Below are positions 1,153 to 38,506 of a stretch of DNA of 64,000 bases, in pieces (within the stretch, counting starts at the first letter, position 1; every line of letters starts with the position of its first letter). The stretch covers positions 5,146,001 to 5,210,000 of the forward strand of contig CM097884.1 in assembly GCA_044892505.1 (NCBI GenBank), written 5' to 3'. The translations under genes and the position numbers were made by a program. Source of the DNA: Schmidtea nova (Eukaryota). The notes beneath the pieces were generated by a model, which saw nothing but the letters and a program-made list of their open reading frames with translations, did no database searches and was not told the DNA's origin.

Positions 1153-4145
1153 CAATATTGAATAACTGATGGTTCTTATTAATTATCCTAAACTGTGGGA
1201 AAGTATATATCTTATTATTTAAATAACAATCAAGATACAACTGGTGTGTTAGTCCAGTATCTTTCATGCTAATCCCCTTAGTCCTCATACACGCGTCGTC
1301 TCCCATCAAACTATAACATTTCGATCTAAGAAACACCCACTCTTCATACAAAAGCCCTTTATTCTAGTCTTTGAATTTACCAATGACAGAATCAAGGCTT
1401 TTACTGTATAAAGGATAATGTGGGTCATAATTAGAAGTGTCCAGCAAGCAATCATTTATCATAGCCGGTGAAAGACTGTTAAGACTACAGTTTTTTTACC
1501 TCAAGAAAAAAGGAATCAGTATCTCCAGCAACGATGTTAATTTCACAGTTGAAGTCATCACGATAGTTTTGTAACTCTTCATACAAAAACTGGTATATTT
1601 GAAGTTTGGATAAATCCAGTACAGTTTGACCGATGTAGCTGGGTCTATCCAAACATACTGATTCCTTTCACAGCAAAACAGAAATAACGTCATTGTCAAT
1701 TTTAATGGTATTTTTAAATGTAGGTTTAGATGCGTATGTTTAAAAGTTTTTGTGTGGAATTACACAAACGCAAATTTAATCGTTTTACAGATTTTCAACA
1801 GTCTCGCCGTAAAGACTGTTGCTAAATAATTTATAAAAGTTTTTATCTAATTTATTTGTCGGCGCTGCTCGTAACACCGTATTTGTATTGATATAATTTT
1901 CAAAATTTTATCTTGTGTGAATTTTATTGCCCTATGCACATATGTTATATTTACACCTATTTTAATAAATAGTTGCAGAAGCCTGCAACGAAAAACGTAG
2001 TTCCTCTTTGGATAATGCGTAATCTCAACCTTTGAACCGGGTGCACACATCTTTTCAGCGGCAACGGGAAGATCATCCAGATTGTCGTGAATTGACGTCA
2101 GTATCTCTAAATCCATTTCTATGGTATAACCACAATGAAGTGCATCTAAATTTACCGTTGTGCACTCAACAATTATTTCATCAAATAAGTGGCCACCTGT
2201 GACCCATTCAAAATTTGCACAAGGCAAGGATTGACTTAAAGTCCAACCATATAAGTTATTTATGTCAATATATAGGAATGCCGTATCCGGGCTAGTTTTG
2301 ACATAATGTTTATTGAAAAACGTTAGCCCGCGACGAATACCGCCCTTGAAAAAGTTATAAATCTCCATATCGGTGAGGAGCTCAATTGGAGAGTTTAAAG
2401 TTAATAATGCCGAATTCCACGACATGCCGGGAATTCCTAAAAGATTTAATGGCTCAAGCCTATTATGTTTAATGGACTTTACCCGAAATTGCTGAAAATA
2501 ATCAGCCAAAAGAAAGACATCGAGCTTTAAATAAACCATCATGTAATTAGAAAGTGAATTACATAATGTTTCAAATTCATTGTGCTGCTGCGTATTCTAC
2601 TGGTGTAACATGTTTCCAGATAGGAGGTAATGATAAAGTCGATCTTAAAACTTCCAATGAAGTAGCTGCATCATAAGGAGAGATACTCTTGGCTGTTCTT
2701 ATTGTGTCGCGAAATTCTGATTGAGTCAATGGTAAAGAAGTCAAAGTTTTGACCGCATTACTTAAAGACTCGCTCACAAATTGATACGAGTGGATAAACT
2801 TAGCTGTTAATGTGTCAATATAAGCAAAAAGACTTAAAACCTTTTCGCTAGTTTACGGAATACAACTTATATTCCAAGTATTATATTTGGAAAGACCGTA
2901 TTTTAAATCAGGGTGTAGATCATACCCCTTTTAATTATGAAAGATGACAAGAAGGGTATGTCTAATCTGTCTGGATTTATTGCAAGAAGAAAATGCAGCT
3001 CCAAGAAATATACCGGAAAAATGGTCGTGATCGCAAACAGGGTTATTTAATAATTTTTTGCAGAAGTAACAAGTTGTGCTGTTGTCAAAAGATAATTGTT
3101 GGGTGGCTGTAATTACCATTTTCTTTTGATAATTTTTAAAAAAATATGGCGTCACGATATATTTGCTTATGGATTCAATTTCATTAAGAAATCGATCGAC
3201 ACAATCTAAACCGAAGAAAGATTTATATATTTAAACTCCAATAAAATTATTAATATGAAGGAGACCGGTGAAATAGGTAAATGTTTCTAAAAGTACCTTG
3301 TGTCTTTAGGTAAGGCAATGTGTATAAGGTGGTACCCAACTGATTTTTTTACAAAGATCCCTATGTCTATTAAAAGCCTCATCATTCCTAAAACCGTTTA
3401 AACATCGAGAACACTACTGACTACAAATCTTAACTGGTGTAATTGAGCTTTTTCGACAATTTAGAAATCTATTTAGGTCTGTAATGGCAAGATAATGATA
3501 AAAAGTTTTATTTTCTAAAAGTAGTAAATTTATAGTTATTCCTCCAACTATCTTACTACGATAAATAATATCTAAAGGGGTGTTTCAATACTACATCATC
3601 ATTACCAACAGAAATATCTATCAATGCCTTTTCATCATATGTAAAAATATTGATACTATAGCCAGTGTTTTGTCACTCAAATTTACTTATATTAGCCAGT
3701 TTCATGGGCATGTCATTTGGGTCATAATTTAATTGTGTAATATCATAAGAAGTAGGACGATTTCTATATTGTCTGTCTATGGTGTCATATTTTATAATAG
3801 ATAAAAAACTATAAAGAAAACAAAAGTCGTCATTATTAACTACATTTACAAGAGAACTTTAATTTTTTATAGATCTTGAGGTTTCTATAAAATTACTGCC
3901 ACTCAACCTACTTATTTCGCAAAAATTTAGTCAGAACAAAGCTTATATATTCAATTTTGAAGATAGTCCAATTGCTCCCTTTCTCATTTACTTTAACAAT
4001 TTTTTCATTTAAATTAGCAATACTTTCATCAATGAAGGTATCACTCCAAACTCTGGCAGAATTCGAGATGACGGAAGATTGTAATTCATCATCCTTCTCA
4101 AATTCTACCTTCAGACAGAATTGAATTTTAACTGATTTTAATTTA

Positions 4146-4949: not shown

Positions 4950-7900
4950 AAAAAACTCCAAACCGATACCGAAACACAAAAACATCTCCCAACTTCCAAA
5001 AATTGCATCGATAAAAAACCATAACTCCTTCATTCATAATAATCCTAAATCAATTCAATCTTCAATAACAATTAAACCAAAAATATACAACAAGCCATGC
5101 GCACACAAGCGCCAACGACACCACAATTCATGCGCAGACATGGGCCGAAACATTCCCCCCTTGATCCCTTCTAGCGGATCAACCGACCAATTTAGCTCTA
5201 GAGGGCAAACCTTGCTTATAGGTCTCATTATCTCATTTCCTCTGCTAAGAATCCTTAACACCCGCACCTTTCCATCTTCTTCAGGACAGACTTCCGCTAC
5301 TCGTCCAAGCTTCCATGATTTTTTACATAATCCGTTTTCCAATAACCAGATCAAGTCCCCGGTTTTTAAATTTTTCCCTTCTTTTGCCAATTTCTTCCTA
5401 TTCCTCCATCCAAGAACAATCTCTTATCTCCATCGCCCCCAAAACTTCTCGCTCAAATCCTGAATCATCTTCCACCGCTTTTTTATGCCAGTTCCCATAA
5501 GTTCTATTTTTTTCTCGCTAAATCTTTTATAACCGGGCTTGACGAAGTGATTCGGCGTCAATATTTCTTCTTCTTCCGGATCCTCACTCATAGTTGTCAG
5601 TGGTCTATTGTTAACCATATCTTCCGCCTCAGCAATGACGGTTTGCAGCTCTTCGTCAGTCAACTCAGCAACTCCAGTAATAGCTAATAAAGCCTTTTTC
5701 GCTTCCTTAACTAATATCTCGAACATCGCCCCAAAGTGTGATGCACTGGGAGGGTTAAAAATCCATTTTATCCTATCATTTTTGAGCCCCTTTTGGATTG
5801 AGTACGTATCAATCTCCACTTTCTCAATTTCACTCGGGGCTCCTACAAAATTCGTCCCGTTATCAGACAAGACTAACATGGGTGTTCCACGACGTGCGAA
5901 ACTTTTGAATGCACTGATGAAACTCTCTGTGTCCAGATGGATCTCCAAGTGGACCGCTCTTGTCACGAGGCAGGTAAATAAACAAAAATAACGCTTCGCC
6001 CTTCGATTTCCACGTCCCCTTATGACCGTTGTTATTGGTCCTGCGTAATCCACCGCAACCTTTTTAAACGCCTCCAGAGGCTCATTCACTCTAAATCCAG
6101 GGAGTGGCTCCATAATCTGTTCCAGTGTCTTGGCTCTCCCTTTTTGACAATTCACACATTCTTTCCTTATCCTTTTAATCAATTGTCGTTCCCCCACAAT
6201 CCAATACCTTTCGTTGACTTTTGACATCAAATACTCCGTTCCACCGTAGTGCTTCAATGACTGGTGTATCTCACCCGACTTTTCCCTGAGAGTATTAGTG
6301 GATACTTCGTCGCCGGATCCATCCAAGTTGCATTTGCCAAACGACTCCCACCCTACATCATTCCGTCATCCCAAATGTTGGGGCATAACGATTTCAATGT
6401 GTTTTTCGTTCCCACAAACTTACCCCTCTGAATGTCTTCCCATTCTTCAGAAAACTCAATTTTTTGATCTTCACGAATCAATGTGACCTCCGCATCCTCA
6501 ATTTCTTCACTTGTAAGTGCCCCATTTTTTCGTTTTGTTTTTTCTTGTTTAATATCTTCAATGAATCTGTTCAGACTAGCTCTTGTACGGACCAGTCTTC
6601 TCCATTTGGAGTAGGTTTTCGGGTCTAAGCAACTCGTTTTCCAAGCTGACTCTATATCATCTCTTCTCGTAATAAGGAAAAATCTCTGTATCCAATTCTG
6701 ATTCTTGGTCTCCTGCGCTCGTTTATTCTCCCAATTTGGTCAACTATCCTCCTCCCCTTGCAGAAACTTTGGCCCTTCAAACCATACCTTGGAATCTCTT
6801 AGTTCTTCTGCTCTCATTCCTCTTGATAGCAAATCTGCGACGTTTTCTTTCGTCGGTACATACCTCTACTGCGGTCTTCTCGTTGACCTTTGAATTTCCT
6901 CGATTCGGTTCGCAACAAATACCTTGCAATAACGCCCTAACTGCGTTATCCAGTACAAGACATCTTCACTATCCGTCCAGAAGGTGATATCTTACACATT
7001 TGTCTTCAAACATTGTGATACCTTTAGCCCTAATTTCACTCCCAATTCCGCCGCCAATAGTTCCAATCGCGGAATGCTCTCTACCTTAATTGGTGCTACT
7101 CTGGATTTGGCTGCGATTAGGTTAGTTCTCACGTCTCCCACTTTACTCTCTCTGACGTAAGTTTCGGCCCCGTATGCGCATTTTGAAGCGTCAACAAAAA
7201 TGTGGATCTTCCATTCATTTTTTGTATCTCCAATTAAATATCTTTCACATCTGATTTCGTTTAAAATCGCAAATTCTTTCAGCCAACTTTCGACCTTCCT
7301 CAACAGATTTGGTGGCAACAATTCATGCTAATCTGTACCAGCTAGCCAAATCTCTTGCATCAACAACTTACCTCTAATCAGAAAACTTCCAGCAAATCCC
7401 AAAGGATCAAAGATTCTGGCTAAACGACTAAGAAATCCTCGTTTCGAGAGACATTGTTGATTTGGGGGTTTGACGTCGTAACCAAACTTATCCTCTGCCG
7501 CAACCCAAACCAGTCCCAGGGTTTTTACTGCCACCTTGTTTTCCTCATTCAAACTTAAGAGCTTTGGTATCCTCTCCATAGGAAGTTTCTAATACCTTTT
7601 TGTCATTAGTGAGCCATTTATTCGTAACCATTTCTGCCTTTTCCCAAATACTAATAATTTCATCCTTGATCCTGATCACTTCCTCGACCGATTGAAAAGA
7701 ATCCATCGTATCATCCATGTACGTGGATTCTATTATTGTTTCTGCCGCTCTCGGAAACCATTCTCGAAATCTCTCAGCATTTCGTTTGGTGACTAACTGC
7801 ACCAGAAACGGAGATATGTTTAGTCCGAAGACTAGCCGTTCAAATTCAAAACCCTCAGTTTTTCCATCTTCATTCCAAATAAATCTTAAATATTTTCTAT

Positions 7901-9845
7901 CCTCTTGATTCACCTTTATCTGGAGGTACATTTTTTGTATATCACAAGCAATCGCCACTGGATGTTTTCTGAATCGTAATAATATCTCAAATAAATCATT
8001 TTGTAGCTTTGGCCCTTGTTCAATAGCATCATTTAAATTAATACCATTATTTTTCGCTGCTGCATCAAAGATTATTCTAATCTTGGTTGTCTCCTTGTCC
8101 ATTTTTATCACAGGAAAATGTGGCAGCCACCACTTTGTCTCACAAAATTCCTTCTCTGCCAACAACCTGATATACCCTTTTCGCACGTAGTCATTGAGCA
8201 CCTCTTTGTAGCTTTCTTTTAACCTACCGTCTTTCGCCAACCGATTGCCTAGACTCCTCAAACGCTTTTCCGCCATTTTCATATTATCTTGAAGTTGATA
8301 CTTGTTCACCCTCCATAACAAGCTAACCGTGAACCTTCCATCCTCGCACGACATACCTTCGATCGCCTTTTGCATTAATATTTCTTCACTCTGGCTGAAC
8401 TGATTCTTTTCAACGTGTCTCCTCAATTTCCCAAAATTGCCGCATCTGGTCTTCCAATCTCTCTGTTTTTCAAAAATAGCTCTGGACAAAATGGGAGTGT
8501 CGTGGAGCTTGATCCCTATTGACCTTGCCCAGACATGTCCACCCGAGAGGCGTCAGTCTTGCAACTGGCTCATCCCTCATCCTTCATTAGAACATCTATC
8601 TGCGGTCTTTCCCCAAGAATCGTGAATCGAATGTCCTTTAGGTGCTCCCAGTTATACGCCACCTTTGCCAATTGCATGCATTTAAGTCCCTGGTGACGCT
8701 TTTAACGAATAGGGTCTTAAAGTTGACTTTCACCTTGTTGTTATTGCTTGCCAATATCTCATCTATCGGCTTTGTTCCTAACATTTTCGATTCCCCCCCG
8801 ATCACGCCCACTGGCATATTTTTCCATAGTCCCCCAGCCTCTAGTTTCTGTGCAGCCCAATCGCTAATGTAACTAACATTACTTGCATCGTCCAGCAATG
8901 CATTTACTCTTATCCTCTTTCCCTTCGATTCTAACACAATAGGTATTGTCCTGAGACTTATGTAACCGATATCATTTAACCTTCAAGTTGCAACTAACCG
9001 AGTGGTATGCGTTTGCGGTTTTTGGTTGCTGTCCCCTGCCAATTCCTTCATTCTTCAAATATGTAGCAAACTATGATGATTTCCTCCACATTCTTTTTCC
9101 TTACAAAATCCTGGTCTGGTGCATTCTCTCACTCCATGTCCTTTTCTTAAGCAACTATAACATAATCTCCACTCTTGAACTCCCTTTCTCCTGTCATTTA
9201 CTGATAATAGTTTGAATTTTGGGCATTGATCCAGATAATGCGCACCCTGACATTTAAAACACATCAACCTGCTTTGATCTTGTTGCATAATTATTCCTAC
9301 CTTACCTTTACTTGAGTTTTGTTTTACCTCATTGCCAGAGTTCGTAAAGTGTGAGTACCTTCTATTGTCAATCTTTTCGGAAGTCTTGAAGTTTTTCTTC
9401 CCGTACTGCCAATTAGAATCATTTTCACGACCAAAACCATATAATATTTCATTTGTCGATCGCGTAAGGTCAGCTTCATTTTGCAACCACTTCTTAAATT
9501 GTGTTATTGATTCCTCACCTTCCTCTTTCGTTTGCTCTCTTTTCCATCGAATAAGTAGAGAAGCTGGTAATTTCTTTAACAATTGTTGCAAGAGACAGCC
9601 TCTCTGTAAGTCCTCTTCTCTTCCGATTGCTTTAAACCGTATCTCCATGGATTCCAACAATCCAACGAAAATATCCAAGTCTTTTATTTCTCCTTCGCGA
9701 ACCGGCCGAAATTTATCTACTGTCTCTAACATAGTCAGGTAACTTCGTTCTTCACCTCCGTAACGCCGTTTCAATTTCTCTTTCTCCATTTAGTAACCTT
9801 CGGCGGTATAACCTAGTGTATCTATCATTCGTAGAGGTTCAACTA
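4950..9845 (-). mobile_element. BEL/Pao LTR retrotransposon, 5'-truncated and decayed
   Basis: Domain order: gag (DUF1759-like ..LKRRYGG, three Cys/His knuckles, 9055-9845), protease (LLDDAS, 8638-8990), RT (WWLPHFPV, RIIFDA, YMDD, 7545-8489), RNase H (FVDASKCAYGA, RLELLAA), integrase (HHCC, SDNGTNF, 5424-6326), C-terminal DUF5641-like region. PPT AAGGGGGGAA is followed by TGTTTCGG (3' LTR start at 5152). The distal LTR end is approximate. Confidence 0.92.
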
Positions 9846-10130
9846 ACAAGTCAAAAAATCAAAAAACATTTAAAAATAATGAAAATTGAAAAAGTTTTAA
9901 AAAATGCTTATTTTGCGATGAGTCATAATTTTCTTTTGATGAGTCATCGATTAATCATCGATTGGTAAAAAAAATTTAAAAATTAGAAATTTTTCGAAAA
10001 AACAATATATGAGTTATCGATGAGTCAAAAATTTTTCTACCCCCGGAGATGGGGTGTCTTTGTTTAAAATATTTCCTCCCGCGCAATGAATCATCATGTC
10101 TTTGTTCCCGGCTCCACACATATAACTACT
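9845..10130. mobile_element. Polinton/Maverick terminus and subterminal region
   Basis: Reverse complement of the end reads AGTAGTTATATGTGTGGAGCCGGGAACAAAGACATGATGATTCA, homologous to the TIR at 27873 (AGTAGGTAGAAGTGTGGAGCCGGAAACAAAGACATTATGACTCA). It shares the TGAGTCA repeats and the CCCC..GGGG motif. It interrupts a gypsy gag at 10130/10131. Confidence 0.8.
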
Positions 10131-14430: not shown

Positions 14431-14985
14431 GCAATATTATTTATCTTCCATCATCTATTTTTTCTATTTAATATACTAGCTATGTTTTTCCAATTAAATT
14501 TTCATGCGGTCCTTCATAAGTAAATTCGAGCTACACTTTTGCAGTTATTCTACCTACTGTATTGGTGCTGGTACTATGCTTTACTTTGTATTATTTGTGT
14601 TTTCATGAAAGCAGACAGATGTGTACACTCCAGAACAAAGACATATGACGCCATCGATGAGTCATAGTCTATCAAAATCAAGTGACCCCCTTCCGCTGGG
14701 TTACTTTTTTGTACAGCCCAATAATCTTTTTACACACATGAAGAGTCATCAAATATTATTTTGTATTTTAAGGTCATTTTAAGGACAAACCACGAGGTAA
14801 TCTTAAGGTCAAGGTTATGAAAAAGAAAAAAGAAGTGCATGAAAAAAATAATATCAAATATTAATCAAGTTAGATATTTAAATTAACTGGTGTTTTAATA
14901 ATTGATTATTTGTCACTTTATAAAATTTTACTTGAAATAAATCTATGAAAGAATTGCAGTCTCTTAAAACCGAGTTTTATTTAAC

Positions 14986-18626: not shown

Positions 18627-18712
<86 letters not shown>

Positions 18713-20023: not shown

Positions 20024-20027
<4 letters not shown>
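19044..20027. mobile_element. Solo LTR-like insertion (984 bp) flanked by (TA)n
   Basis: TGTAAAG...TTAACA termini. Gypsy pol frame stops at ~19025 and resumes at ~20056. Internal direct repeats at 19300-19540. Confidence 0.7.
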
Positions 20028-20058
<31 letters not shown>

Positions 20059-26789: not shown

Positions 26790-28019
26790 ATTTTGCAGTT
26801 GATAAGGAGTCGAATTCACGGCAAATGGATGTTCACGAGGAGTCGATGGCGAATACAATTTTCGAACGTTTCGCGAAGGCGCACTATGCCCGAAACGCTT
26901 CACCGGATTTACAATTTTGGGAGCCCTAGTCCAACAAATATTTGAGGCCCCATTTTGAAAAATAAAAAATATTTCTAAGTTTTTAAATTCAAAAATATAT
27001 TACAACTTTAATATAATTCAAGATTTTATTTCAATTTGTAAAAAATATTGTTTACAATCTACATAATCTTTTTTCTGTATTTTTCATCAACAAAATCGTT
27101 AACCAATGAATCAAAATCAATCGACTTCATTTTGTCAGCATTACTTGATAATAATGCAAAATTAGTTAACGTTTTTTGTGACAAAGTTGATCGCAAATCA
27201 TTTTTCGTTAATTTTAATTTTGAAAATGACCTCTCTCCAGAGCAGTTGGATATCATGAAACATGAAAATTCTCAGAACTATCTCGGTATTAGGAAATGCA
27301 GCCTCCATTTGTTTTTCTTTAATAAATTTGTTCAAATCCAAATGGGACAATTGAGGAGCTTGAGTATTGAAATGATCTTTCAAATAAAGATGAAGATGTT
27401 CGATTTCTGCGTATAAATTTTCGTCAATGTCTTCTGCGTAGTCTTCCCCCAGACGGTCAACACAAATCTTCAGTTTATCTTTATTGATTTTTGTGTCTTT
27501 TAAAAATCCAAATTTGTCATTCAATTCCATGTAGCATTGGGCTCTTTCTTTCAAATTTGTAGTGAGATCATTGATGATTTTTAAGAAAACATTTGTCTTA
27601 AACTCTTCACGTGGACTCAACTGGGTTTCTTCTGAGCGATTTTCACCTGAAAGCTCTTTTCTTTTACGTCGTCTCTTTTCTAAATAACCAGTGTCTGATA
27701 ACAGCAATTTAGCATCTTGTTCTATTAAATCGAAATTTTCAGTTATTCCAATAAGATAATCACCAAGAGATGAATAAAGTTCAGAACATGTATCCAGAGT
27801 AATAGTTACACTTTGCAATGATTTGGAAACTGCATTCATTCGTTGAAAAATTTGATACCACATTACTATTTGAGTAGGTAGAAGTGTGGAGCCGGAAACA
27901 AAGACATTATGACTCATCGATGACTCATAACAAAGAACCCCCCCCCCGGGGGGTTGGTAGGAATTTTTTTTATGACTCATCGCGATGACTCATCGATGAC
28001 GTCATCGATGACTCATTTC

Positions 28020-29220
28020 AAATTTGAATTTCCAAAGGTCAAACAAGGTCAAACCTTCAAACAAGGGTATCATTCGAAAGGTCTTGGAAAGGTCTATCCA
28101 ATGGTCATACCCTTGAAGGTTTATGGAGGGTCCTTGACCTTCGAAGGGTCAAAAACCTTCAACCTTTTTTAAACCTTATAATATATATATCAAACAAAAG
28201 GTAATTGAGAGGTAAGTAAGATGGTCATACCCTTGAAGGTCTATGGTGGGTGCTCAACCTTCAAAGGGTGCAAAACCTTCAACCTTTTTCAAACCTTGTG
28301 TGTAATACATCAAACAAAAGGTAATTGAGATGTGCACACAATGGTCATACCCTCGATGGTCTATGGTGGGTGCTCAACCTTCAAGGGGTCAAAAACCTTC
28401 AAACCTTATAAGTTATATATCAAACAAAAGGTAATTGTGAGATGTGTGTGTGTTACAATTTACAAAGGTAATTGAGAGGTAGGTATGCTGGTCATACCCT
28501 TGAAGGTGTATGGAGGGTCCTTGACCTTCGAAGGGTCAAAAACCTTCAACCTTTTTCAAACCTTATAATATATATATCAAACAAAAGGTAATTGAGAGGT
28601 AAGTAAGATGGTCATACCCTTGAAGGTCTATGGTGTGTGCTCAACCTTCAAGGGGTTAAAAACCTTCAAACCTTATAAGTTATATATCAAACAAAAGGTA
28701 ATTGAAATGTGCACACAATGGTCATACCTTCAAAGGTCATACCCTTGAAGGGTCCAAGGTTCAAATTTTTAAAACTATATAATATGTATATCAAACAAAA
28801 GGTAATTGAAGGGTGCACACAATGGTCATACCCTTAAGGGTCCAAGGTTCAAATTTTTAAAACTATATAATATGTATATCAAACAAAAGGTAATTGTGAG
28901 ATGTGTGTGCGTGTGTGTTACAATTTGCCAGAAGAGTGTGAGTGTGTGTGTTACAAATCCTTTTTTTCAAACCTTATAATATGTATATCAAACAAAAGGT
29001 AATTGAAATGTGCACACAATGGTCATACCTTCAAAGGTCATACCCTTGAAGGGTCCAAGGTTCAAATTTTTAAAACTATATAATATGTATATCAAACAAA
29101 AGGTAATTGTCAGATGAGTATGTGTGTGTTACAATTTGTCTGGCGAGTATGTTTGTGTGTGTGTGTTACAAATCCTTATTCAAACCTTATAATATACATA
29201 TCATTCGAAAGGTAATTATG
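28020..29220. repeat. Subterminal tandem array of ~100-130 bp units
   Basis: About 9-10 recurrences of TATCAAACAAAAGGTAATTG alternating with GGTCATACCCTTGAAGG and AAAACCTTCAA. Confidence 0.85.
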
Positions 29221-29388
29221 GTGTGTGTGCGTTATAATTTTTTCTATTTCCTACCTGAATTACAACAAAGACATTGCAATTCATGTGCAACGAAACAAAG
29301 ACATTGCAATCCATGTGCAACGAAACAAAGACTAATAAAACTTGTAATAATAATTTTTGCACACGTATCTTAGTGTTTAATAAGGATC

Positions 29389-29570
29389 ACAGTACACATT
29401 GAACGCGCGTGGAACGCGCGTTCTTCTCCTCTTGTTGTTTAAGACAAATAACAGTACGCATTGAACGCGCGTGGAACGCGCGTTCTTCTCCTCTTGTTGT
29501 TTAAGACAAATAACAGTACGCATTGAACGCGCGTGGAACGCACGTTCTTCTTCTCTTGTTGTTTAAGACA

Positions 29571-29572
<2 letters not shown>
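29389..29572. repeat. Three 62-bp tandem units, each with a CpG-rich hairpin
   Basis: Units start at 29389, 29451 and 29513; each contains GAACGCGCGT-GGA-ACGCGCGTTC (third copy has one mismatch). Confidence 0.9.
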
Positions 29573-29603
<31 letters not shown>

Positions 29604-29652
29604 TTATAAAAAATATAATAATAATAGAAACTTATAAAAAATATAATAATAA

Positions 29653-29698
<46 letters not shown>

Positions 29699-29936
29699 TT
29701 ATAAAAAATATAATAANNNNNNNNNNNNNNNNNNNNNNNNNNNNNNNNNNNNNNNNNNNNNNNNNNNNNNNNNNNNNNNNNNNNNNNNNNNNNNNNNNNN
29801 NNNNNNNNNNNNNNNNNNNNNNNNNNNNNNNNNNNNNNNNNNNNNNNNNNNNNNNNNNNNNNNNNNNNNNNNNNNNNNNNNNNNNNNNNNNNNNNNNNNN
29901 NNNNNNNNNNNNAATAATAATAGAAAATTATAAAAA

Positions 29937-29988
<52 letters not shown>

Positions 29989-30294
29989 TTATAAAAAATA
30001 TAATAANNNNNNNNNNNNNNNNNNNNNNNNNNNNNNNNNNNNNNNNNNNNNNNNNNNNNNNNNNNNNNNNNNNNNNNNNNNNNNNNNNNNNNNNNNNNNN
30101 NNNNNNNNNNNNNNNNNNNNNNNNNNNNNNNNNNNNNNNNNNNNNNNNNNNNNNNNAAACTTTTAAAAATATATAAATAGCATGCGAAAGATATTTGAGA
30201 TGTATGTATGTGTATATTTTCAAACCTTCAAGATGTCAAAATAAAATAATTAAACTACCACAACGTAATATATATTTATTTTCCTACCCATTTT

Positions 30295-30477
30295 GACATT
30301 GCAAAACAGATGCAAGTTAACAAAGACATTGCAAAACAGATGCAAGTTAACAAAGACATTGCAAAACAGATGCAAGTTAACAAAGACATTGCAAAACAGA
30401 TGCAAGTTAACAAAGACATTGCAAAACAGATGCAAGTTAACAAAGACATTGCAGTTGCAAGCCAAGTTAACAAAGAC
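30295..30477. repeat. 30-bp tandem array (5 perfect copies + 1 variant)
   Basis: Unit GACATTGCAAAACAGATGCAAGTTAACAAA. Confidence 0.95.
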
Positions 30478-30573
30478 AAGATGTCCAAAAAGACTAATTA
30501 TTAATCACAAAGTGCATTCTCTTAGCCAATGATAAAAATAAATTAAATGAAAATACATATATTTTGTATGACA

Positions 30574-31089
30574 TTATATGTATATCACATGATATTCATC
30601 AATATTAATACCACAAGACTCACACTTATCAATATTTTTTAAACATTTTGAACAAATAATGACATGTCCACAAGGTAAATATAAAATGCCAACTCTATTG
30701 ATATTACATATTGAACATGTGAGAAATCTTTGTTTGGTTTCTTCCAATTTCTTGGTTACATTTACCTCTAAAATATCCACATTCAGCATGAAAGTTCGAA
30801 TAATAGTACGATATTTTCCAAGTCGAAATTCCATACATGACCAGAAAATGGTATTCAAATTGAATTCAGTAGAATCGATATCATTAAGAATCATAATAAA
30901 ACTGGATAATTTCATCATGGATTTATCATATCCGAATGATTCTGTTAAACCAATTATTAATTTATTATTGAAGGATTTGAATAATTTTGAAAGAATGTCG
31001 ATATCGCATTTCTCAATCGATGTTAAAAGGTCATCAAGTATTAAAAAGGATTGGATCCAATTGTCCAAAGTAATGAAATTATCTGTAAC
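30574..31089 (-). CDS. RING-HC (IAP-type C-terminal RING) E3 ligase-like gene, exon 2
   Basis: Open frame from acceptor AAACTAG|GTT to stop. The C-terminus CSICNINRVGILYLPCGHVIICSKCLKNIDKCESCGINIDEYHVIYI is a C3HC4 RING with an IAP-like hydrophobic tail. No BIR domain. Confidence 0.8.
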   Translation of the reverse strand, partial: VTDNFITLDNWIQSFLILDDLLTSIEKCDIDILSKLFKSFNNKLIIGLTESFGYDKSMMKLSSFIMILNDIDSTEFNLNTIFWSCMEFRLGKYRTIIRTFMLNVDILEVNVTKKLEETKQRFLTCSICNINRVGILYLPCGHVIICSKCLKNIDKCESCGINIDEYHVIYI

Positions 31090-31133
31090 CTAGTTTAAAA
31101 TAATTAATTTAAATATATATTTTTAAAACTAAC

Positions 31134-31160
31134 TTTATTTGTTTCTTTATTCATTTTCAT
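31134..31160 (-). CDS. RING gene, putative exon 1 (MKMNKETNK)
   Basis: ATG..AAA|GTTAGT donor, 44-bp AT-rich intron (31090-31133), phase 0, giving a ~180-aa protein. Confidence 0.55.
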
Positions 31161-31329
31161 CAATCAATACTATTTACAAGTTGTATTTATATTGCAAAAA
31201 TCAACCAATTTAATAACCAAACATTTTATTGACCAACCAATGATTGAAAGTTTTGCTAAACTGTTACATTGAAATGATGATAAGTGACATTGAAAATTAG
31301 GTAACAGTATATTTATTATTAGAAATATG

Positions 31330-34300
31330 TTCAAGTAATGAGCTTTTGCACATCAAAACCATCACAGAATAGGTTCTGCTACTAGTGTTCTGCTCGCAAT
31401 GTTCTGCTACTAAATGTTCTCTCACTATGACAAATACATGAAAAGTTATTATACTATTGAGATAATCACACATATTATTCTTAAATTATAGTACAAATAT
31501 ATCAAAAATATATGAAATATACATTACATACTTGAAATATTATCACAAAGTATCATTACATACATGAAATAACATTATACTATTGTGCAAATTACATACA
31601 AAATATCATCATACTGCAATTACATCGAAAATCACCAAAATTATACACAAAATATGAAAAGTACATAGAAATTCGTCACATATAAAAACATTACATATAT
31701 GAACTATTATCAAAAATACATACAAAATACATATAAATTTATCACACACGTACAAAATATCACCATACTATAGTGAATAAATATACATACAAAATGTCTG
31801 AAATACAAACATACATAAAATATCATCTTACTATAGTTTGATAACATAGAAATACATGAAATATCCTCAAAATACAGAAACTTTCACAGATATATAGATT
31901 CATCATACAAAATATCATATATAAGAAATATCATTACAGATTATCACATGCATGAAATATTATTATAGTGCAAATTACATAGAAAATAGCAAAGATACAT
32001 GAAATATCATCACAAAATACACATAAAATTATAGGAAATTTTCACACTAGAAATAATAATAATAATAATCATAAAAAGAATATTATCACGCCAGTACAAA
32101 ATTATACAGAATATTATCACATTGAACAAAAGCTTATCATATATATGAAATATTATTATACTTTTATGTAAACTACAAAGAAAAATACAAACATATACAC
32201 AAAATATTATCACATTATAGTGTCTAAACATTGCAAATACTCACAAAATATGTGAAATATGACCATAAAATATCAAAGAATCACAAAGAAAATATATAAA
32301 AGATTATCATATTTTTGTTTGATAACATAAAAATACATTGAAATACATAAAAAATTATTAAAATGCATACAAGTATCATTACATACATGAAATATCATTA
32401 CACAAAATGTTATAACGCATGAAATATTACCATACAAAATATCAAAAGTACATAGAAATAAATCCTATACACAAAGGATATCATTACATATATGAAATAT
32501 CATCATACTTTAATACAAATACAGACAAAATATTATCATGCTATATTCCAAATACACTTAATATTAAAATAGAAATATCATGCATACATACATACATATG
32601 AAAAGTGGTCATGTTATAGTCAGTCAAATGCATGAATTATTATCATACTAGTGTAAAATACATATATAATATCAAAAAATGTATCATACATACAAAGGAT
32701 ATCATCACAAAGTATCAATACATACATTAAATATCATCACACTATAGTACAATTAAATAGATAATCATCAAAATATACAGAAATTAATCAATTTCACAAC
32801 AATACTCATTAAAGAAATATCTACATACTTGTGCAATTACATAATAAATATACAGAAATACCAAAATTATATGAAATATCATCACAAATATCAACACATA
32901 TGAAATATTATCATACATACACAAAGAATATAATAACATATTTAGAAAATTATCACATACAAAATATCAAAAGTCCATTACACATATAATTTAACAGTAA
33001 TAAATGTTTAATTAATGAGCTTTTGCACATAAAAACCATCACAGAATAGGTTCTGCTACTAGGGTTCTGTTCGCAATGTTCAGCTAGCAATGTTCTGCTA
33101 CTGAATAAATTTGATGAAAATGTAACAATGTATTATGAATGGAAATAAATCTCAATCATTACAGTAAATTCTACTTTAAAATGAGGTTGAATGCATGAAA
33201 TGTCATTATTCTATAGTGATAATACATGAAATACTCTTTAGATACATGACTTTAGATGCATCAAATATTATCTTACTATAGTTTGATAACATAGAAAAAA
33301 TAAATAGAAATCATCAAAATTATACAAAATATTAAAAAAAAAATATTAAATTAAATATCATCATAAAGTACATAGAAAATCATCAAAAATACACAGAAAT
33401 TCATCAAATTCACAACAATAATCATTAAAGAAATATCTACGTACTAGTGTCATTACATAAAAAATATCTGAAAATTTAAGATATATCATCACAAATATCA
33501 ACACACATATGAAATATTATCATATACAAAGGATATAATCACATACAAAGGTTCATTACACATACAAAATATAATATATCAACATACCTTAATGTAACAG
33601 TAATAATTGTTCAAGTAATGAGCTGTTGCACATAAAAACCATCACAAAAGATGTTCTGATACTAGGGTTCTGCTACTAAATGTTCTGCTAGTCATGTTCT
33701 GCTACTGTAAAAAAATTAATGAAAGTTATATGAATGGAAATAAAACTATCATCATACTATAGTGCAAATACATTAAAATATTCACAAAATGATATTAGAT
33801 GCATCAAATATTATCTAACTATAGTTTGATAACATATTAAAAATAGATCATTTGAAATGTCATCACAAAATACATAGATATTCATGTACAAAATATCACA
33901 AAATATCACAAATACAATAGAAACACATATCAAATATATATGAAATGTCATCACAAAGTATCATTAAATATATGAAATATCATAATTCTACAGCGTAATT
34001 ACAAGAAAATCTCCACAAAATATCACAAATACAATAAAATTCATCAAAAATACATAGCAATTCATCAAACAACAAATATTCACATAATAATTCTCATTAA
34101 AAGTGTATCAGTAAATGTAATATGCTTTCACAATTTTTCTGTTACATTGATCGAAGCTCATATGCTAATGATTGTTATTTTAGTATATGTGTGAATAATA
34201 ATAAGCTTTTGCACATAAAAACCATCACAAAAGATGTTCTGTTACTAAAGGTTCTATCCGAAATGTTTTGCTAGTGGATAAATTTAATGAAAATTATACG

Positions 34301-34500
34301 AGTGACAATAAATTGTTAGAGTAAATTCTACATTAAAATGAAGAAAACCGATAGAAAATATTAATTGGTGAAAATATTAGAACAAATGATGCTGAATGAA
34401 TTGTAATAAATGTTCGAGTAATAAGCTTTGGCAGATAAAAACCATCACAGAATAGGTTCTGATTCTAAAGGTTCTGTTCGAAATGTTCTGCTAGCATGAA
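31330..34500. repeat. Low-complexity ATATCATCACAAAATAC-rich region punctuated by five copies of a conserved ~85-95 bp motif
   Basis: Motif TAATRAGCTTTTGCACATAAAAACCATCACA(G/A)AA..GTTCTG(CTACTAG) at ~31333, 33011, 33611, 34196 and 34414. Confidence 0.8.
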
Positions 34501-34834
34501 ATTAATATCATAAAATTATAGTCTGTGACAAAATAATATGTTGAAATAGTTATTGGAAATATATAGTCTGTGACAAAATAATGATTGGAAATATATAGTT
34601 TGTGACAAAATAATAATTATTGGAAATACGCGCAAATAAATAAATTAAAATAATATCAAACTGTACATCATAGTTTTAATTTCTTGTAAAAAACAATGCG
34701 GGTTATCAAAATTCATGTTCTAAATAAAATTTTACAATTTAAAATACCACAACGTAAAATATTTATAAAGTACCACAACGTAATAAAAGTTGGTATATAT
34801 CTATTACAATTTTATAAGTAATTCATTTTAAACC

Positions 34835-35059
34835 ATGAATTCTGAACACTATAATGATAATCAAGTTAAAGAACCTATTTCAGTAAATGGAGTTTCGATG
34901 CCTGAAAGTCCTAAACTTTCAAGTAAACGTACAAGTAAATTTATATTTATTTTTATAAAGTTATTTTTATAATATTTATTAGAAAAATATAAAGAAATTA
35001 ACAGTCCAATTGAAGAATTACAGAACCTAATAAATTCTTACTTGGACTCTTTGTTATGA
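34835..35059 (+). pseudogene. Spliced Polinton gene truncated by the right TIR
   Basis: Exon 34835-34934 (MNSEHYNDNQVKEPISVNGVSMPESPKLSSKRT), 48-bp GT-AG intron, then an in-frame exon (KYKEINSPIEELQNLINSYLDS) that runs into the TIR at 35048 and stops. Confidence 0.55.
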
Positions 35060-37189
35060 GTCATCGATGAGTCATAATGTCTTTGTTTCCGGCTCCACAC
35101 TTCTACCTACTTATTTGTAAGGCAAATTCAAAAGGTTCCACTTTCGATAGTAAATTGCCAGCCTCAGCTCTTGCTTTCGTTTCAAAACTTTCACTCTCAT
35201 TGATTGTGAGCAATGCTTCCATCAATTTGTCGTAGTTCTGCTGAATGGATTTGACCGAGTCAGCATGAGCGCTCCATCGAGTATTCGATAGTGATTTCAA
35301 TGAACTACTTGCCAATTGTCCCAAAATACTCCATCGCTTTGTAGAAACAGAGAAAAAATTGTAGAGTTCATGAACAATACCGAGAAACTTAATTCCTTCG
35401 ATGCAACAGTCCACAGCAGCCTCTCCCACTAAGTTAAGAGAATGACCTGAACATGGCAAGAATTTCGCCAGCTCATTGAGTTTCAAAATTTTAGTTTTCA
35501 TGCCTATATATTTTCCAGTCATATTTCTCGCGTTATTATAAGACTGGCTTCTGCAGTTGCTGATTTCCAAGTTCAATCTTTCGTCTAAAAAGCCAACGGT
35601 TACATTTGCTAAATTTTCCCTTATGTGATTATCGATGTGGATGTAGTTGACAAATCTTTCGATTGGCTCATTAGAAGTTTGATCAATGTACCTCAAGATC
35701 ACACATAGTTGATCTTTGTGGCTCACATCAGGTGTCGAGTCTACTGATAATCCATAATACTTTGATTTTAGAACATCATCGCTGATTGATTGCAAAACTT
35801 TTCTCGCTCAACTCCTCACATGTAGTCTTTGAGAGGTAATTTGTTTTTCCAGAACCGTTGTCACCATAATTTTTTATGGGTTCGGCCAAAAAAGGATCAA
35901 ACTGTGAAATCAACTCGAGCAGACCAATAAAATTCCAGTTGCTCTCAGCCCCAAATTTTTCATTTGAACCTCTAAAAGCTAAGTTTCTTTCAATCAATGT
36001 TCAAATTACAGCCGTGACTCTTCTTAGAACCTCTCTCCAGTAGTTTTTATCTTTGCGAATTTCGTTTAGAAGTTGATCCTTTAAAACGTTGTTATTTTTT
36101 TCTGTGAAAGTATGCTAAAGAAGCTTTTCTGTGGTCCGATGAGTTCTCATGGCCTTGAATTGATGCCACAGAATTTTTCCAATCTTTAAATCCCGTTGAA
36201 GCTAAGGCAAATTTTGAGGCTTCAAAAAGTTTGCAGACAAAACAGAATACACAACCCAACGCTGGTGAATATATGAGCCATTCTCTATTAAACGTTTCAC
36301 CGTTCACTTTTTTCCCCACAAACAAGCTTTTTGAGCAATATCGATCGCGATCTTGATACGTCATTATAGAGGATTTAAAGTCATTATCTGCATTTTGACA
36401 TGTTGACGGACCGCTCTCTATCCAAAATTGTATTTCCTCAGCTGAAAGGTTATCCCAAAGTCCTGGATCACTTTTTCTATTCAATGGCAAATCTTTTTGA
36501 ATATCCGTCTCTTCATCGAGTTCTGATTGTTCGTTTAAAGTTTGAGTCACCTTGATTGAGTCCTCTAAAAGACCCGATAAACTAGCTTCTTCACTTATGC
36601 CAAAGTTTGTAAAATTAGCTGAAGTTGATGAATTAGCATGAGATTCGGTTTCAACAGACAACTATCGAGATTTCGATGTTTCTTAATGTTTTTTCTATTT
36701 CTGCTTTTTTCTTTCTTTTTGCAGCTCCACTTTCATAAGTTCTTAAGGAGCTTCTTCCCATTTCTGGTTGAAATTTTTTTTTCTCGGAGAAATTAACTTA
36801 ATATATTTTAATTTTAAGATGAAAATTTTATCAATGAAAATATTAAAATCACTATGAAATAATTATATTGCAAATCGATTGATATTAAAAATATTTTTCA
36901 TACTACTCAAAATTATTTTGGGGCCCCTTATTTTGCGGGGCCCCTAGGCCATGGCCTAGTCGGCCTGCCTGTAAATCCGGCCCTGTCTGTCGTGTATTCT
37001 ATAGAAAAGTAAAATAATCTTTTTTAGTTGTTTTAATAATAAATAGAAGTTGATATATTTATTTCTAATTACTTTTTTTAAATAGAAAAAGAATTAGTTT
37101 GTTCATTTCACTTTACTATCTACAAGATAGAAGATTTTTAAAACTTCATTTGATCCCAATAGTGTTCCTTGGGTAAAGAAATTGGCTTA

Positions 37190-37790: not shown

Positions 37791-38506
37791 TGTTTTGCTC
37801 TAACAAAATCTTTTGGAAAGCTAATGGGATATTTTAAAATTCCAAATATGTTCTTCCTTTTATAGTTCGTCAAATTTGTGGGGCTTGACATTATTTTGTT
37901 TTTCCATTTTCGCCTCTCGCATTCTCCACAACTCCTGCCTATCCTGACAGCTAACGAGATATGCCAAACTTCCTTTTTTGTTATTCCGACCTTTCTCCTA
38001 CAATCCTATTATCTCTGACTGTTGAGATATGAAATTTCCTCTTGTTTTTGTTTTTTTTCAATTTTGGAATTTTTCTCCCTTTTTATACTTCTTAATTAGG
38101 GATGACCTTTTCTTGCGAATCTTTCTATTTCTATTATTTTGTTGCCATCTTCTCACTTCTCACTTTTTGCTCTTCCTTCTTTCTTCTTTCAAAACATCAC
38201 ATCAATTACCCTGTCCATCTTCCCCCAATAATTTTAATTATTTGTGATAATATTTAATTTATTATTTAGGTATCCTCAACATTATAAATTATTATTATTA
38301 TTATTATTTATTATTATTATTATTATTATTATCATTATTATCACCATTATTATCANNNNNNNNNNNNNNNNNNNNNNNNNNNNNNNNNNNNNNNNNNNNN
38401 NNNNNNNNNNNNNNNNNNNNNNNNNNNNNNNNNNNNNNNNNNNNNNNNNNNNNNNNNNNNNNNNNNNNNNNNNNNNNNNNNNNNNNNNNNNNNNNNNNNN
38501 NNNNNN

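What the first reader, a model, noticed from the sequence alone, without database searches (positions are those of the whole stretch)
27873..35111. Non-autonomous Polinton/Maverick mini-element carrying its own cargo gene
Seen: perfect 64-bp AG..CT TIRs, an exact 6-bp TSD, precise interruption of a hAT transposase codon run, no core Polinton genes in the sequenced interior, multiple repeat arrays and one apparently intact RING gene. Established: 6-bp TSD plus AG..CT ends are the Polinton signature, and autonomous copies are typically 15-25 kb with PolB and integrase. Inference: TIR identity and the TSD at the short right end indicate the deleted form integrated as a unit, i.e. a satellite or defective element mobilised in trans, with a related PolB-bearing copy in the same window. 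This is the strongest candidate in the window for an undescribed helper/satellite system.
Basis: partly seen in the sequence, partly recalled or inferred. Interest (0 to 1): 0.85.

Follow-up and report, generated by a model that had tools for sequence, protein, structure and literature searches.

The report
Gene-poor Maverick-like insertion with RING gene
A 7.2-kb mobile element with Maverick/Polinton-type ends but no polymerase, integrase or capsid genes sits precisely inside an old hAT transposon and carries one small IAP-type RING ubiquitin-ligase gene. It is most likely a non-autonomous relative of a known kind of virus-like transposon, not a new kind of system.

Summary
Perfect 64-nt inverted ends lie at 27873-27936 and 35048-35111, flanked by an exact 6-bp duplication (TATTTG). 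The two flanks of the host hAT reading frame stay in phase. A related, uninterrupted hAT copy from a public read assembly runs straight through the site with one copy of the hexamer, which proves a precise insertion.

The read interior (about 6.9 kb) holds tandem arrays, a (TAA)n minisatellite that contains both N gaps, an A-rich repetitive block and one gene. That gene is a 164-codon exon for an IAP-type RING protein with about 15 small relatives in public data. No core Maverick gene is present.

The ends start AGTAG, close to the published Maverick end motif (AGT)2. Two more termini of the same design lie in the window, at 10130 and 14610. The first starts AGTAGT and lies 7 kb from a decayed protein-primed PolB, with a BEL/Pao fragment between them.

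A non-autonomous Maverick-like element is the best reading (about 0.55). Movement in trans as a unit is untested, because no other copy could be searched. The PolB copy is broken and only distantly related, so it is not the helper. PolB-lacking Polinton derivatives are already reported, so this is a new member of a known kind.

The parts
27867..27872 (.). Left copy of the 6-bp target-site duplication (TATTTG)
   Evidence: An empty site with a single hexamer is seen in L003.
27873..27936 (+). Left terminal inverted repeat, 64 nt, starting AGTAGG. It contains one AACAAAGACATT motif and two ATGACTCAT nonamers.
27937..28099 (+). Left subterminal region, absent from the right end: a C10/G6 palindrome, a T-run, three more ATGACTCAT nonamers and one TGACGTCA. 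It is homologous to the termini at 10130 and 14610.
28100..29217 (.). Nested tandem arrays with periods of about 104-267 nt
29264..29332 (+). 30-nt repeat, 2.3 copies. Each unit begins with the TIR motif AACAAAGACATT.
29389..29575 (.). 62-nt repeat, 3 copies, 96% alike
29573..30156 (.). (TAA)n-bearing minisatellite holding both assembly gaps (29717-29912 and 30007-30156). Gap content and true length are unknown.
30295..30478 (+). 30-nt repeat, 5-6 copies, each with AACAAAGACATT. It belongs to the same repeat family as 29264-29332 and lies just 3' of the RING gene.
30574..31089 (-). Main exon of the RING gene. The ORF listed by the tool is 30574-31068. Homology to P0001 extends to 31089, directly after an AG. 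The product has six helices and a C-terminal IAP-type RING.
31134..31160 (-). Candidate first mini-exon (ATG plus 8 codons), followed by a hand-read 44-nt GT..AG intron (31090-31133). Not predicted by any tool and not shown to be shared by relatives.
   Evidence: my reading; low confidence
31161..35047 (.). A-rich, internally repetitive non-coding block. It holds about five copies of a ~95-nt module with a 14-15-nt triple repeat and a ~630-nt higher-order repeat. No ORF has a family match.
35048..35111 (-). Right terminal inverted repeat, 64 nt, ending CCTACT. The inner junction at 35047/35048 has none of the subterminal motifs seen at the left end.
35112..35117 (.). Right copy of the target-site duplication (TATTTG)
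27043..27866 (-). Host hAT copy, part downstream of the insertion. Relatives carry Dimer_Tnp_hAT.
35118..36661 (-). Host hAT copy, part upstream of the insertion (DUF4371; weak zf-C17orf113-type finger)
9860..10130 (-). Related terminus, starting AGTAGT. It is 87% identical to the element's end over 45 nt and has the same order of subterminal motifs over about 110-230 nt. The inner bound is approximate.
14610..14780 (+). More diverged related terminus, starting AGCAGA. It has the same motif order: GAACAAAGACAT, ATCGATGAGTCAT, a C-run/G-run and a T-run.
827..3155 (-). [quoted passage not shown] It has at least four interruptions: at least three frame changes and at least one in-frame stop.
   Evidence: relatives carry PF03175; weak support; count from the ORF table
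5055..9850 (-). BEL/Pao retroelement fragment lying between the 10130 terminus and the PolB remnant. It is 5'-truncated, has no LTRs in the window, and its pol is split into at least six ORF pieces.

Best explanation
The block 27873-35111 is a non-autonomous member of a Maverick/Polinton-like family of virus-like DNA transposons.

Shown:
- It entered a hAT copy as a discrete unit with two matching ends and made a 6-bp duplication.
- Its ends start with the AGT-type motif of Mavericks.
- It encodes nothing that could replicate or integrate it.
- Its only gene is a small IAP-type RING protein.

Inferred:
- The 6-bp staggered joining was done by a retrovirus-like (rve) integrase supplied by another element.
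- The terminal AGT(AG) repeat and the first tens of bases are the cis signals for that integrase and, if the element is copied like its relatives, for a protein-primed polymerase.
- The family's ends were once longer than 64 nt. The left end still carries the family's subterminal module (a C/G palindrome and a cluster of ATGASTCAT nonamers that read like bZIP AP-1/CRE sites), while the right end kept only 64 nt.
- The loss of core genes predates this insertion. The ends and TSD are still perfect, yet 6.9 kb of interior holds no trace of a core gene.
- The RING protein is probably a working E3 ubiquitin ligase expressed from its own local promoter. Whether it serves the element or is a passenger is unknown.
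For: Ends and insertion:
- Perfect 64-nt TIRs and an exact 6-bp TSD.
- An empty site in a 93-95% identical hAT copy.

Fit to the Maverick signature:
- Published Maverick signature: 6-bp TSD and end motifs (AGT)2//(ACT)2 or (AG)3//(CT)3.
- This element starts AGTAGG, and the related terminus at 10130 starts AGTAGT.

Family design:
- The left subterminal design is shared by three termini.
- All 10 ATGASTCAT nonamers of the 64 kb lie within about 210 nt of a terminus, against 0.86 expected.
- AACAAAGACATT is 9-fold enriched and confined to the termini and two internal arrays.
- A pPolB remnant lies on the same strand 7 kb inside the 10130 terminus; its relatives carry PF03175.

Interior:
- No core gene among the interior ORFs.
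- No RNA family or tRNA.

RING gene:
- zf-C3HC4_3, E = 1.9e-9.
- 50% identity over the full length to P0001, and about 15 small full-length relatives with invariant Cys/His positions.
- Confident model, pLDDT 94.6.
- The RING superposes on cIAP2, XIAP, cIAP1 and IDOL RINGs at 1.0-1.7 A and on the RINGs of viral IAPs.
Against: - Only one copy with this structure is known, and no other copy could be searched.
- The TIR is 64 nt, below the 100-1000 nt given for Polintons.
- No terminus is seen joined directly to a Maverick gene. A BEL/Pao fragment without LTRs abuts the 10130 terminus, and the left end of that element was not found.
- No Maverick-type integrase, capsid, ATPase or protease was found among the window ORFs that were scanned.
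- The interior shares nothing with the PolB-bearing region, even at protein level.
- Two gaps of estimated length lie inside the element.
- The RING ORF has no ATG of its own, and the splice model is hand-read.
Confidence: 0.55

Rival explanations
1. A full-length Maverick integrated here and was gutted afterwards. Internal deletions, tandem-repeat expansion and sequence replacement removed the core genes and the inner part of the right TIR. On this reading it is a one-off relic, never mobilised in its present form.
For: - Only one copy is known.
- The ends are asymmetric, with the right arm cut to 64 nt while the left keeps the family's subterminal module. That is the scar an internal deletion leaves.
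- The window shows other heavily rearranged Maverick-like remnants.
Against: - The ends (64/64) and TSD (6/6) are still perfect, so little time has passed.
- Even so, no fragment of any core gene survives in 6.9 kb.
- The interior is not a simple deletion product. It is about 7 kb of unrelated arrays plus a conserved, open RING exon.
Confidence: 0.2
2. It is a non-autonomous element of another integrase- or transposase-driven DNA transposon group that also makes 6-bp duplications (Ginger2/TDD-like or an undescribed group). On this reading the nearness of a PolB remnant to a related terminus is coincidence in a TE-dense region.
For: - Ginger2 elements make 6-bp AT-rich duplications.
- The window is packed with unrelated TEs.
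- The terminus at 10130 abuts a retroelement fragment, not a Maverick gene.
- The TIR is shorter than usual for Polintons.
Against: - Ginger termini follow TGTNR and the Ginger2 target is RTATAY. Here the ends are AGTAG and the TSD is TATTTG.
- The AGT-repeat end motif with a 6-bp TSD is what is published for Mavericks.
- The only polymerase- or transposase-type gene on the inner side of a related terminus that is not part of an identified retroelement is a pPolB.
Confidence: 0.15
3. The element is not gene-poor: the assembly gaps (or a collapsed or mis-scaffolded interior) hide the core module, so the 'mini-element' is an assembly artefact of a full-length copy.
For: Two gaps of estimated length lie inside the element, and their content is unknown.
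Against: - Both gaps sit inside one minisatellite array, and each begins after the same 27-nt string, the usual reason for a short unresolved stretch.
- The five gaps of the window have different lengths (145-196), which suggests estimates from spanning evidence and not fixed placeholders.
- The two flanks belong to one empty site, and a 30-nt repeat family lies on both sides of the gaps.
Confidence: 0.07

Closest known systems
Autonomous Polintons/Mavericks (Kapitonov & Jurka 2006; Pritham et al. 2007; Barreat & Katzourakis 2021, PMC8097293)
   Same: A 6-bp target-site duplication, terminal inverted repeats and an AGT-type terminal repeat motif. A related terminus lies near a protein-primed PolB.
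   Different: The element is 7.2 kb, not 15-25 kb. It has no pPolB, integrase, protease, ATPase or capsid genes in the read sequence. Its TIR is 64 nt against 100-1000 nt.
polB-lacking polinton-related insertions carrying LINE cargo in Pieris mannii (preprint 10.1101/2025.02.07.637071)
   Same: A Polinton-derived insertion that lacks polB, carries foreign cargo and still behaves as a discrete insertion. The 10130 terminus abutting a BEL/Pao fragment is a similar picture.
   Different: Those were defined by presence/absence polymorphism across genomes, whereas mobility here is only inferred from one insertion. The cargo here is a RING gene plus repeat arrays, and no core gene at all is seen.
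Non-autonomous Polinton families as filed in repeat libraries, and Tlr1 elements 'sometimes viewed as non-autonomous polintons' (PMC5499653)
   Same: The concept of Polinton-type ends without the replication and integration genes. That repeat libraries hold such entries is my recollection, not a test.
   Different: No library entry could be compared. Tlr1 elements are large and gene-rich, unlike this element.
Ginger2/TDD cut-and-paste transposons (PMC2836005)
   Same: A 6-bp AT-rich duplication made by an integrase-like transposase.
   Different: Ginger2 has termini TGTNR and target RTATAY. Here the ends are AGTAG and the TSD is TATTTG.
IAP-family RING E3 ligases (cIAP1/2, XIAP) and the IAPs and RING proteins of large DNA viruses of invertebrates
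   Same: A C-terminal zf-C3HC4_3 RING ending a few residues before the stop. It superposes at 1.0-1.4 A on cIAP2 and XIAP RINGs. One family relative has a BIR domain. Viral IAP RINGs also match.
   Different: This protein has no BIR domain. Its six-helix N-terminal domain matches no Pfam family and no structure.
Virophage or satellite with helper (for example Mavirus-type relations)
   Same: It works like these only in the general sense of a small replicon that depends on a larger relative's machinery.
   Different: No evidence of packaging, of a helper or of more than one copy. This is an analogy, not membership.

Membership tests
Polinton/Maverick (cis features) | 6-bp target-site duplication | tested here: met
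   TATTTG lies on both sides. A related uninterrupted hAT copy has a single hexamer at the site.
Polinton/Maverick (cis features) | Terminal inverted repeats with a short terminal tandem repeat of the AGT/AG type: 5'-(AGT)2//(ACT)2-3' or (AG)3//(CT)3 | tested here: met
   The element has AGTAGG...CCTACT (5 of 6 positions of (AGT)2). The related terminus at 10130 is AGTAGT exactly, and the one at 14610 is AGCAGA. The motif is as published for vertebrate Mavericks.
Polinton/Maverick (cis features) | Long TIRs (100-1000 nt) | tested here: not met
   The TIR is 64 nt. The left end's further ~150 nt match other termini of the family, so the right arm may be shortened.
Polinton/Maverick (autonomous element) | [quoted passage not shown] | tested here: not met
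   None in the read interior. A decayed one lies elsewhere in the window, near a related terminus.
Polinton/Maverick (autonomous element) | Retrovirus-like integrase without the N-terminal H2C2 finger | tested here: not met
   None in the element. The integrases found in the window carry Integrase_H2C2 and belong to LTR elements.
Polinton/Maverick (autonomous element) | Capsid, packaging ATPase and adenain-like protease module | tested here: not met
   No such family among the ORFs scanned. Capsid proteins are poorly covered by Pfam, so absence outside the element is weak evidence.
Non-autonomous (trans-mobilised) derivative | Shares its termini with an autonomous element of the same genome | tested here: inconclusive
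   It shares 87% over 45 nt, and the motif order over about 110 nt, with a terminus lying 7 kb from a broken pPolB. No intact partner is in the window.
Non-autonomous (trans-mobilised) derivative | Several copies with the same internal structure at different sites with different TSDs | not testable with these tools
   No search of this genome is on hand. The junction 32-mer gave 0 hits in metagenome contigs. Exact-protein look-ups and the protein search found no second copy, but the genome itself does not seem to be in those collections.
Ginger2/TDD | Termini TGTNR; 6-bp target RTATAY | tested here: not met
   The ends are AGTAG. The TSD is TATTTG (reverse complement CAAATA), which does not fit RTATAY.
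LTR retrotransposon or solo LTR | Direct long terminal repeats, TG..CA ends | tested here: not met
   The end repeats are inverted, not direct. The terminal sequence occurs only twice in the element, and the ends are AG..CT.
IAP family (cargo protein) | At least one BIR domain | tested here: not met
   Pfam finds only the RING. One of 19 family members has a BIR domain.
IAP-type RING E3 ligases (cargo protein) | C-terminal C3HC4 RING of the zf-C3HC4_3 type with all zinc ligands | tested here: met
   E = 1.9e-9. C118, C121, C133, H135, C139 and C142 are invariant, and C149 and C152 nearly so. Structural matches to cIAP2, XIAP and cIAP1. Ligase activity itself was not tested.

The most novel reading that the evidence does not exclude
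The element is a true satellite of a resident Maverick. It is a stripped replicon that keeps only the terminal origin and integration signals, plus a left-end module of transcription-factor-like sites. A helper copies, perhaps packages, and integrates it. It keeps its own IAP-type RING ubiquitin ligase because that protein acts on the host or on the helper to the satellite's benefit. This would be an animal-genome counterpart of virophage or satellite relations.
Probability: 0.1. Interest if true: 0.75.

Novelty: new member of a known kind. Interest (0 to 1): 0.4.

Why it matters
Mavericks/Polintons are treated as self-sufficient, virus-like giants, and little is written about their dependent derivatives. 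This is a clean, recently inserted, gene-poor copy with exact boundaries. It shows which cis sequences may be enough for integration: 64 nt at one end. It also points to a conserved subterminal module (a C/G palindrome plus ATGASTCAT nonamers) as a candidate regulatory or origin element. In addition it adds a small, previously unnamed family of RING proteins with a novel helical domain.

If many copies exist, the element would be a handle on helper dependence in this class. If it is unique, it is just one more decayed insertion.

Tried and rejected
1. LTR-retroelement origin. The related terminus at 10130 is followed by BEL/Pao genes, so I tested whether the family is a retroelement. No direct repeats flank that fragment, its gag is cut off at the 5' side, and the element's repeats are inverted. 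Rejected.

2. BEL/Pao as a simple nested insertion into a Maverick. It has no LTRs on either side, so this stays unexplained.

3. Other end of the 10130 and 14610 elements. Searches with the termini, with relaxed matching and with TSD-plus-end patterns found nothing.

4. Similarity between the element's interior and the PolB-bearing region or the other remnants. None at DNA or protein level.

5. A paralogous hAT in the window as an empty site. It is too distant. The Logan copy served instead.

6. More copies elsewhere. The junction 32-mer in metagenome contigs gave 0 hits. Exact look-ups of the RING ORF and of a subterminal ORF found nothing on record. P0001 has no contig on record.

7. Genomic context of RING relatives. 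They lie on four short or uninformative contigs with no Maverick genes beside them.

8. PolB pieces. Pfam, PHROGs and PDB sequence searches gave only weak or no hits. The identification rests on relatives that carry PF03175.

9. RNA genes. Rfam and tRNA scans found none.

10. Kapitonov & Jurka 2006 is not held in the library, so statements about non-autonomous Polintons in repeat libraries are my recollection.

11. The N-terminal domain of the RING protein was not folded or searched on its own. The whole-model searches matched only the RING.

12. The joined-exon translation of the RING gene model was left out, because the intron is hand-read and neither tool-predicted nor shared with relatives. 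Only the main exon was searched, by reference.

Full report
**1. The observation**

The two arms 27873-27936 and 35048-35111 are 64 nt long and 100% complementary, with 7111 nt between them. The 64-mer occurs nowhere else in the window, and no shuffle produced a match. The hexamer TATTTG lies immediately outside both arms, at 27867-27872 and 35112-35117. The element begins AGTAGG and ends CCTACT.

On the minus strand an ORF runs into the element from each side. The element plus one hexamer is 7245 nt, a multiple of three, and the two ORFs share their phase. The host frame is therefore split without a shift (my arithmetic).

- The right piece carries DUF4371 (E = 2e-8).
- Relatives of the left piece carry the hAT dimerisation domain PF05699.
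- A further downstream ORF gives a weak hit to the same domain.

**2. Independent proof of a precise insertion**

One relative of the left piece is P0160, from a Logan assembly of run ERR2512125 (a 90% cluster of 29 sequences). It aligns residues 1-61 to the last 61 residues of the right host piece (92% identity) and residues 62-159 to the first 98 residues of the left piece (88%), with no gap.

Its contig L003 matches window 35753-35111 at 92.7% and 27872-27043 at 94.8%. The two matches overlap by 7 nt in L003. The alignment shows a single hexamer, CAAACA, where the window has CAAATA on both flanks in that orientation. This is an empty site in a paralogous or orthologous hAT copy. The boundaries and the 6-bp duplication are real.

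**3. The gaps**

- Gap 1 (29717-29912) and gap 2 (30007-30156) both start directly after the same 27-nt string of a (TAA)n-bearing minisatellite. The 94-nt island between them is another unit of that array.
- No coding run reaches either gap. The one 'ORF' across them is made of unread letters. The nearest real coding sequence, the RING exon, ends 418 nt to the right of gap 2.
- Both sides belong to one insertion: the two ends pair, the two flanks abut in the empty site, and a 30-nt repeat family lies on both sides (29264-29332 and 30295-30453).
- The five gaps of the window differ in length (145-196), as estimates do.
- What the gaps contain is unknown. I did not look it up in other copies.

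**4. Anatomy of the read interior, left to right**

- The TIR.
- A subterminal region with a C10/G6 palindrome, a T-run, three more ATGACTCAT nonamers and a TGACGTCA.
- Nested tandem arrays at 28100-29217.
- A 30-nt repeat, a 62-nt repeat, then the minisatellite with the gaps.
- A perfect 30-nt x 5.3 array.
- The RING exon on the minus strand.
- A 3.9-kb A-rich block with about five copies of a ~95-nt module and a ~630-nt higher-order repeat.
- The right TIR, joined directly to that block.

The 12-mer AACAAAGACATT of the TIR heads every unit of both 30-nt arrays. There are 12 matches in the window against 1.4 expected, all but two of them in the element or at the related terminus at 10130. No interior ORF of 40 codons or more resembles a polymerase, integrase, protease, ATPase or capsid protein. 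No Rfam family or tRNA is present.

**5. The RING gene**

The 164-codon ORF matches zf-C3HC4_3 (E = 1.9e-9).

- In 5.8 billion proteins, the word-based search found one relative: P0001, 198 aa, 50% identity over 99% of the query.
- A full HMMER scan of 1.84 billion representatives found 309 hits at E <= 1e-3. Most cover the RING only, but about 15 are small (150-200 aa) proteins that align over the whole length.
- In their alignment the zinc ligands are invariant or nearly so. All 19 sequences have the RING, one has a BIR domain, and none has a Pfam family for the N-terminal part.
- AlphaFold gives a confident model (pLDDT 94.6): six helices followed by the RING.
- Only the RING finds structural neighbours: cIAP2, IDOL, XIAP and cIAP1 at 1.0-1.7 A, and the IAPs and RING proteins of baculoviruses, iridoviruses, entomopoxviruses and giant viruses.

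The ORF starts with TTG. Homology to P0001 continues seven codons further upstream, to a codon that directly follows an AG, and a stop lies just beyond. Upstream I read an ATG plus eight codons, followed by GT (31134-31160), which would give a 44-nt GT..AG intron. No tool predicted this and I have no evidence that relatives share it. I therefore did not join the exons, and I searched the main exon alone.

The contexts of four relatives are short metagenome contigs, or a contig end beside a Gypsy-like polyprotein. None shows Maverick genes.

**6. Relatives of the ends inside the window**

Outside the element, the only non-microsatellite similarity is 10086-10130, on the minus strand: 87% over 45 nt and 91% over 34 nt. 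That terminus starts AGTAGT.

Alignment shows that it follows the element's left end beyond the 64-nt TIR: a second AACAAAGA, a C-run/G-run palindrome, a T-run, then ATGAGTCAT nonamers. A third, more diverged terminus of the same design starts at 14610 on the plus strand with AGCAGA. All ten ATGASTCAT nonamers of the 64 kb lie within about 210 nt of one of these four ends, against 0.86 expected. The family therefore has a conserved subterminal module, which the element's right end lacks. Both other termini have it, which mildly favours a family with longer TIRs and a shortened right arm here.

**7. What lies behind the related termini**

Left of 10130, on the minus strand:

- About 270 nt of terminus.
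- A BEL/Pao fragment (outer bounds about 5055-9850) with DUF1759, RVT_1, Peptidase_A17, Integrase_H2C2 and DUF5641. It is cut off at the 5' side, its pol is split into at least six ORF pieces, and it has no LTR anywhere in the first 24 kb.
- An ORF resembling the N-terminal third of the ribonucleotide reductase small subunit.
- A decayed protein-primed PolB (outer bounds about 827-3155). Five of the seven relatives of its largest piece carry PF03175. The flanking pieces have only weak support. I count at least four interruptions: at least three frame changes and at least one in-frame stop.

Right of 10130, another gag with CCHC knuckles is cut off exactly at the terminus, so 10130 is a true insertion boundary.

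However, its polymerase is broken, its terminus is a distant relative of the element's, and its continuity from terminus to polymerase is not shown. Behind 14610 lies a Gypsy-like element with 121-nt direct repeats and nothing Maverick-like. No integrase of the Maverick type was found in the window. Those present carry the H2C2 finger of LTR elements, which Maverick integrases lack according to PMC2836005.

**8. Comparison with known kinds**

- Vertebrate Mavericks have 6-bp TSDs and end motifs (AGT)2//(ACT)2 or (AG)3//(CT)3 (PMC8097293).
- Polintons are given as 15-20 kb with 100-1000-nt TIRs, and a 1-3-nt terminal tandem repeat is tied to protein-primed synthesis (PMC4196379).
- The element meets the TSD and end-motif criteria, fails the TIR-length criterion and has none of the genes. 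It is not an autonomous Polinton, but it has the cis signature of one.
- Ginger2 also makes 6-bp AT-rich duplications, but with TGTNR ends and an RTATAY target. Neither fits.
- polB-lacking Polinton-related insertions with LINE cargo are described in a 2026 preprint, and 'non-autonomous polintons' is an existing notion. From memory, repeat libraries hold non-autonomous Polinton entries, but I could not check this.

**9. Mechanism**

Shown: a discrete unit with two matching ends was joined into a hAT copy with a 6-bp stagger.

Inferred:
- The joining enzyme was an rve-type integrase made by another element.
- The terminal AGT(AG) repeat and adjacent bases serve as integrase site and, if copied like its relatives, as a protein-primed origin.
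- The ATGASTCAT/TGACGTCA cluster reads like bZIP (AP-1/CRE) sites and may act as a promoter, enhancer or origin auxiliary, as host-factor sites do in adenovirus ITRs. This is an analogy from general knowledge, not a test.

The argument that the short form integrated as such is indirect. The 64/64 ends and 6/6 TSD imply little time since insertion: if each base of each arm changes with probability d, the chance of no difference is about exp(-128d), which falls below 5% once d exceeds about 2.3%. Yet no remnant of a core gene survives. That favours, but does not prove, loss before insertion.

**10. Verdict**

- The best explanation (non-autonomous Maverick-like element with a RING gene) has a confidence of about 0.55.
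- Rivals: post-insertion decay 0.2, another 6-bp-TSD transposon group 0.15, hidden genes in the gaps 0.07.
- Novelty: new member of a known kind.
- Interest: 0.4.

Noticed in passing
window 9860-10130 (-) and 14610-14780 (+): Two further termini of the same family face away from each other across 4.5 kb of host-like DNA. One starts AGTAGT and the other AGCAGA. Neither has a findable partner end in the window.
   Followed up: partly
window 9918-9947, 14657-14665, 27909-28016, 35056-35075: All ten ATGASTCAT nonamers (perfect AP-1/GCN4-type palindromes) of the 64 kb lie within about 210 nt of a terminus of this family (0.86 expected). One TGACGTCA (CRE-type) sits among them at the element's left end.
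   Followed up: partly
window 4452-4895 (-): An ORF resembles the N-terminal third of the ribonucleotide reductase small subunit (Pfam E = 7.6e-6, below the family cut-off; PDB RRM2B E = 9e-10). It lies between the BEL/Pao fragment and the PolB remnant. It could be a host pseudogene or cargo of the Maverick remnant; this is not resolved.
   Followed up: partly
window 5055-9850 (-): A BEL/Pao fragment with all pol domains but no LTR on either side and a gag cut off at the 5' side. It is joined directly to the Maverick-like terminus. How this junction arose is unexplained.
   Followed up: partly
window 10140-11046 (-): A gag-like reading frame with two CCHC knuckles ends exactly at the 10130 terminus, so that terminus marks an insertion into another retroelement.
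   Followed up: no
window 12073-12303 (+): An ORF with an NIF (CTD-phosphatase-like) domain hit (E = 2.3e-5, above the family cut-off), probably an exon of a host gene.
   Followed up: no
window 14868-21377 (+) and 39984-42829 (-): Two Gypsy-like elements. The first has 121-nt direct repeats (95% alike) and broken genes. The second has long open RT-RNase H and integrase frames.
   Followed up: no
window 44357-45224 (-), 60010-62039, 47419-48137 (-): Tc1-like (HTH_Tnp_Tc3_2) fragments, mariner-like (HTH_48, Transposase_1) fragments and a second, distant DUF4371 hAT copy. The window is very TE-dense.
   Followed up: no
L004:131-1236 and L005, L001, L002:10001-10504: Relatives of the RING protein come from short metagenome contigs. 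One contig packs three small same-strand genes into 1.3 kb, which suggests a compact (possibly viral or protist) genome for some family members.
   Followed up: no
window 31327-31420, 33004-33096, 33600-33696, 34199-34298, 34403-34496: A ~95-nt module with a triple 14-15-nt repeat (GTTCTGCTACTAAAT type) occurs about five times. One copy lies about 200 nt upstream of the candidate start of the RING gene, so it may be promoter-related.
   Followed up: no
window 29690-29716 and 29980-30006; also 38282-38353: Both gaps of the element, and at least one other gap of the window, are bordered by (TAA)n-type simple repeats. The assembly breaks at this repeat class.
   Followed up: partly
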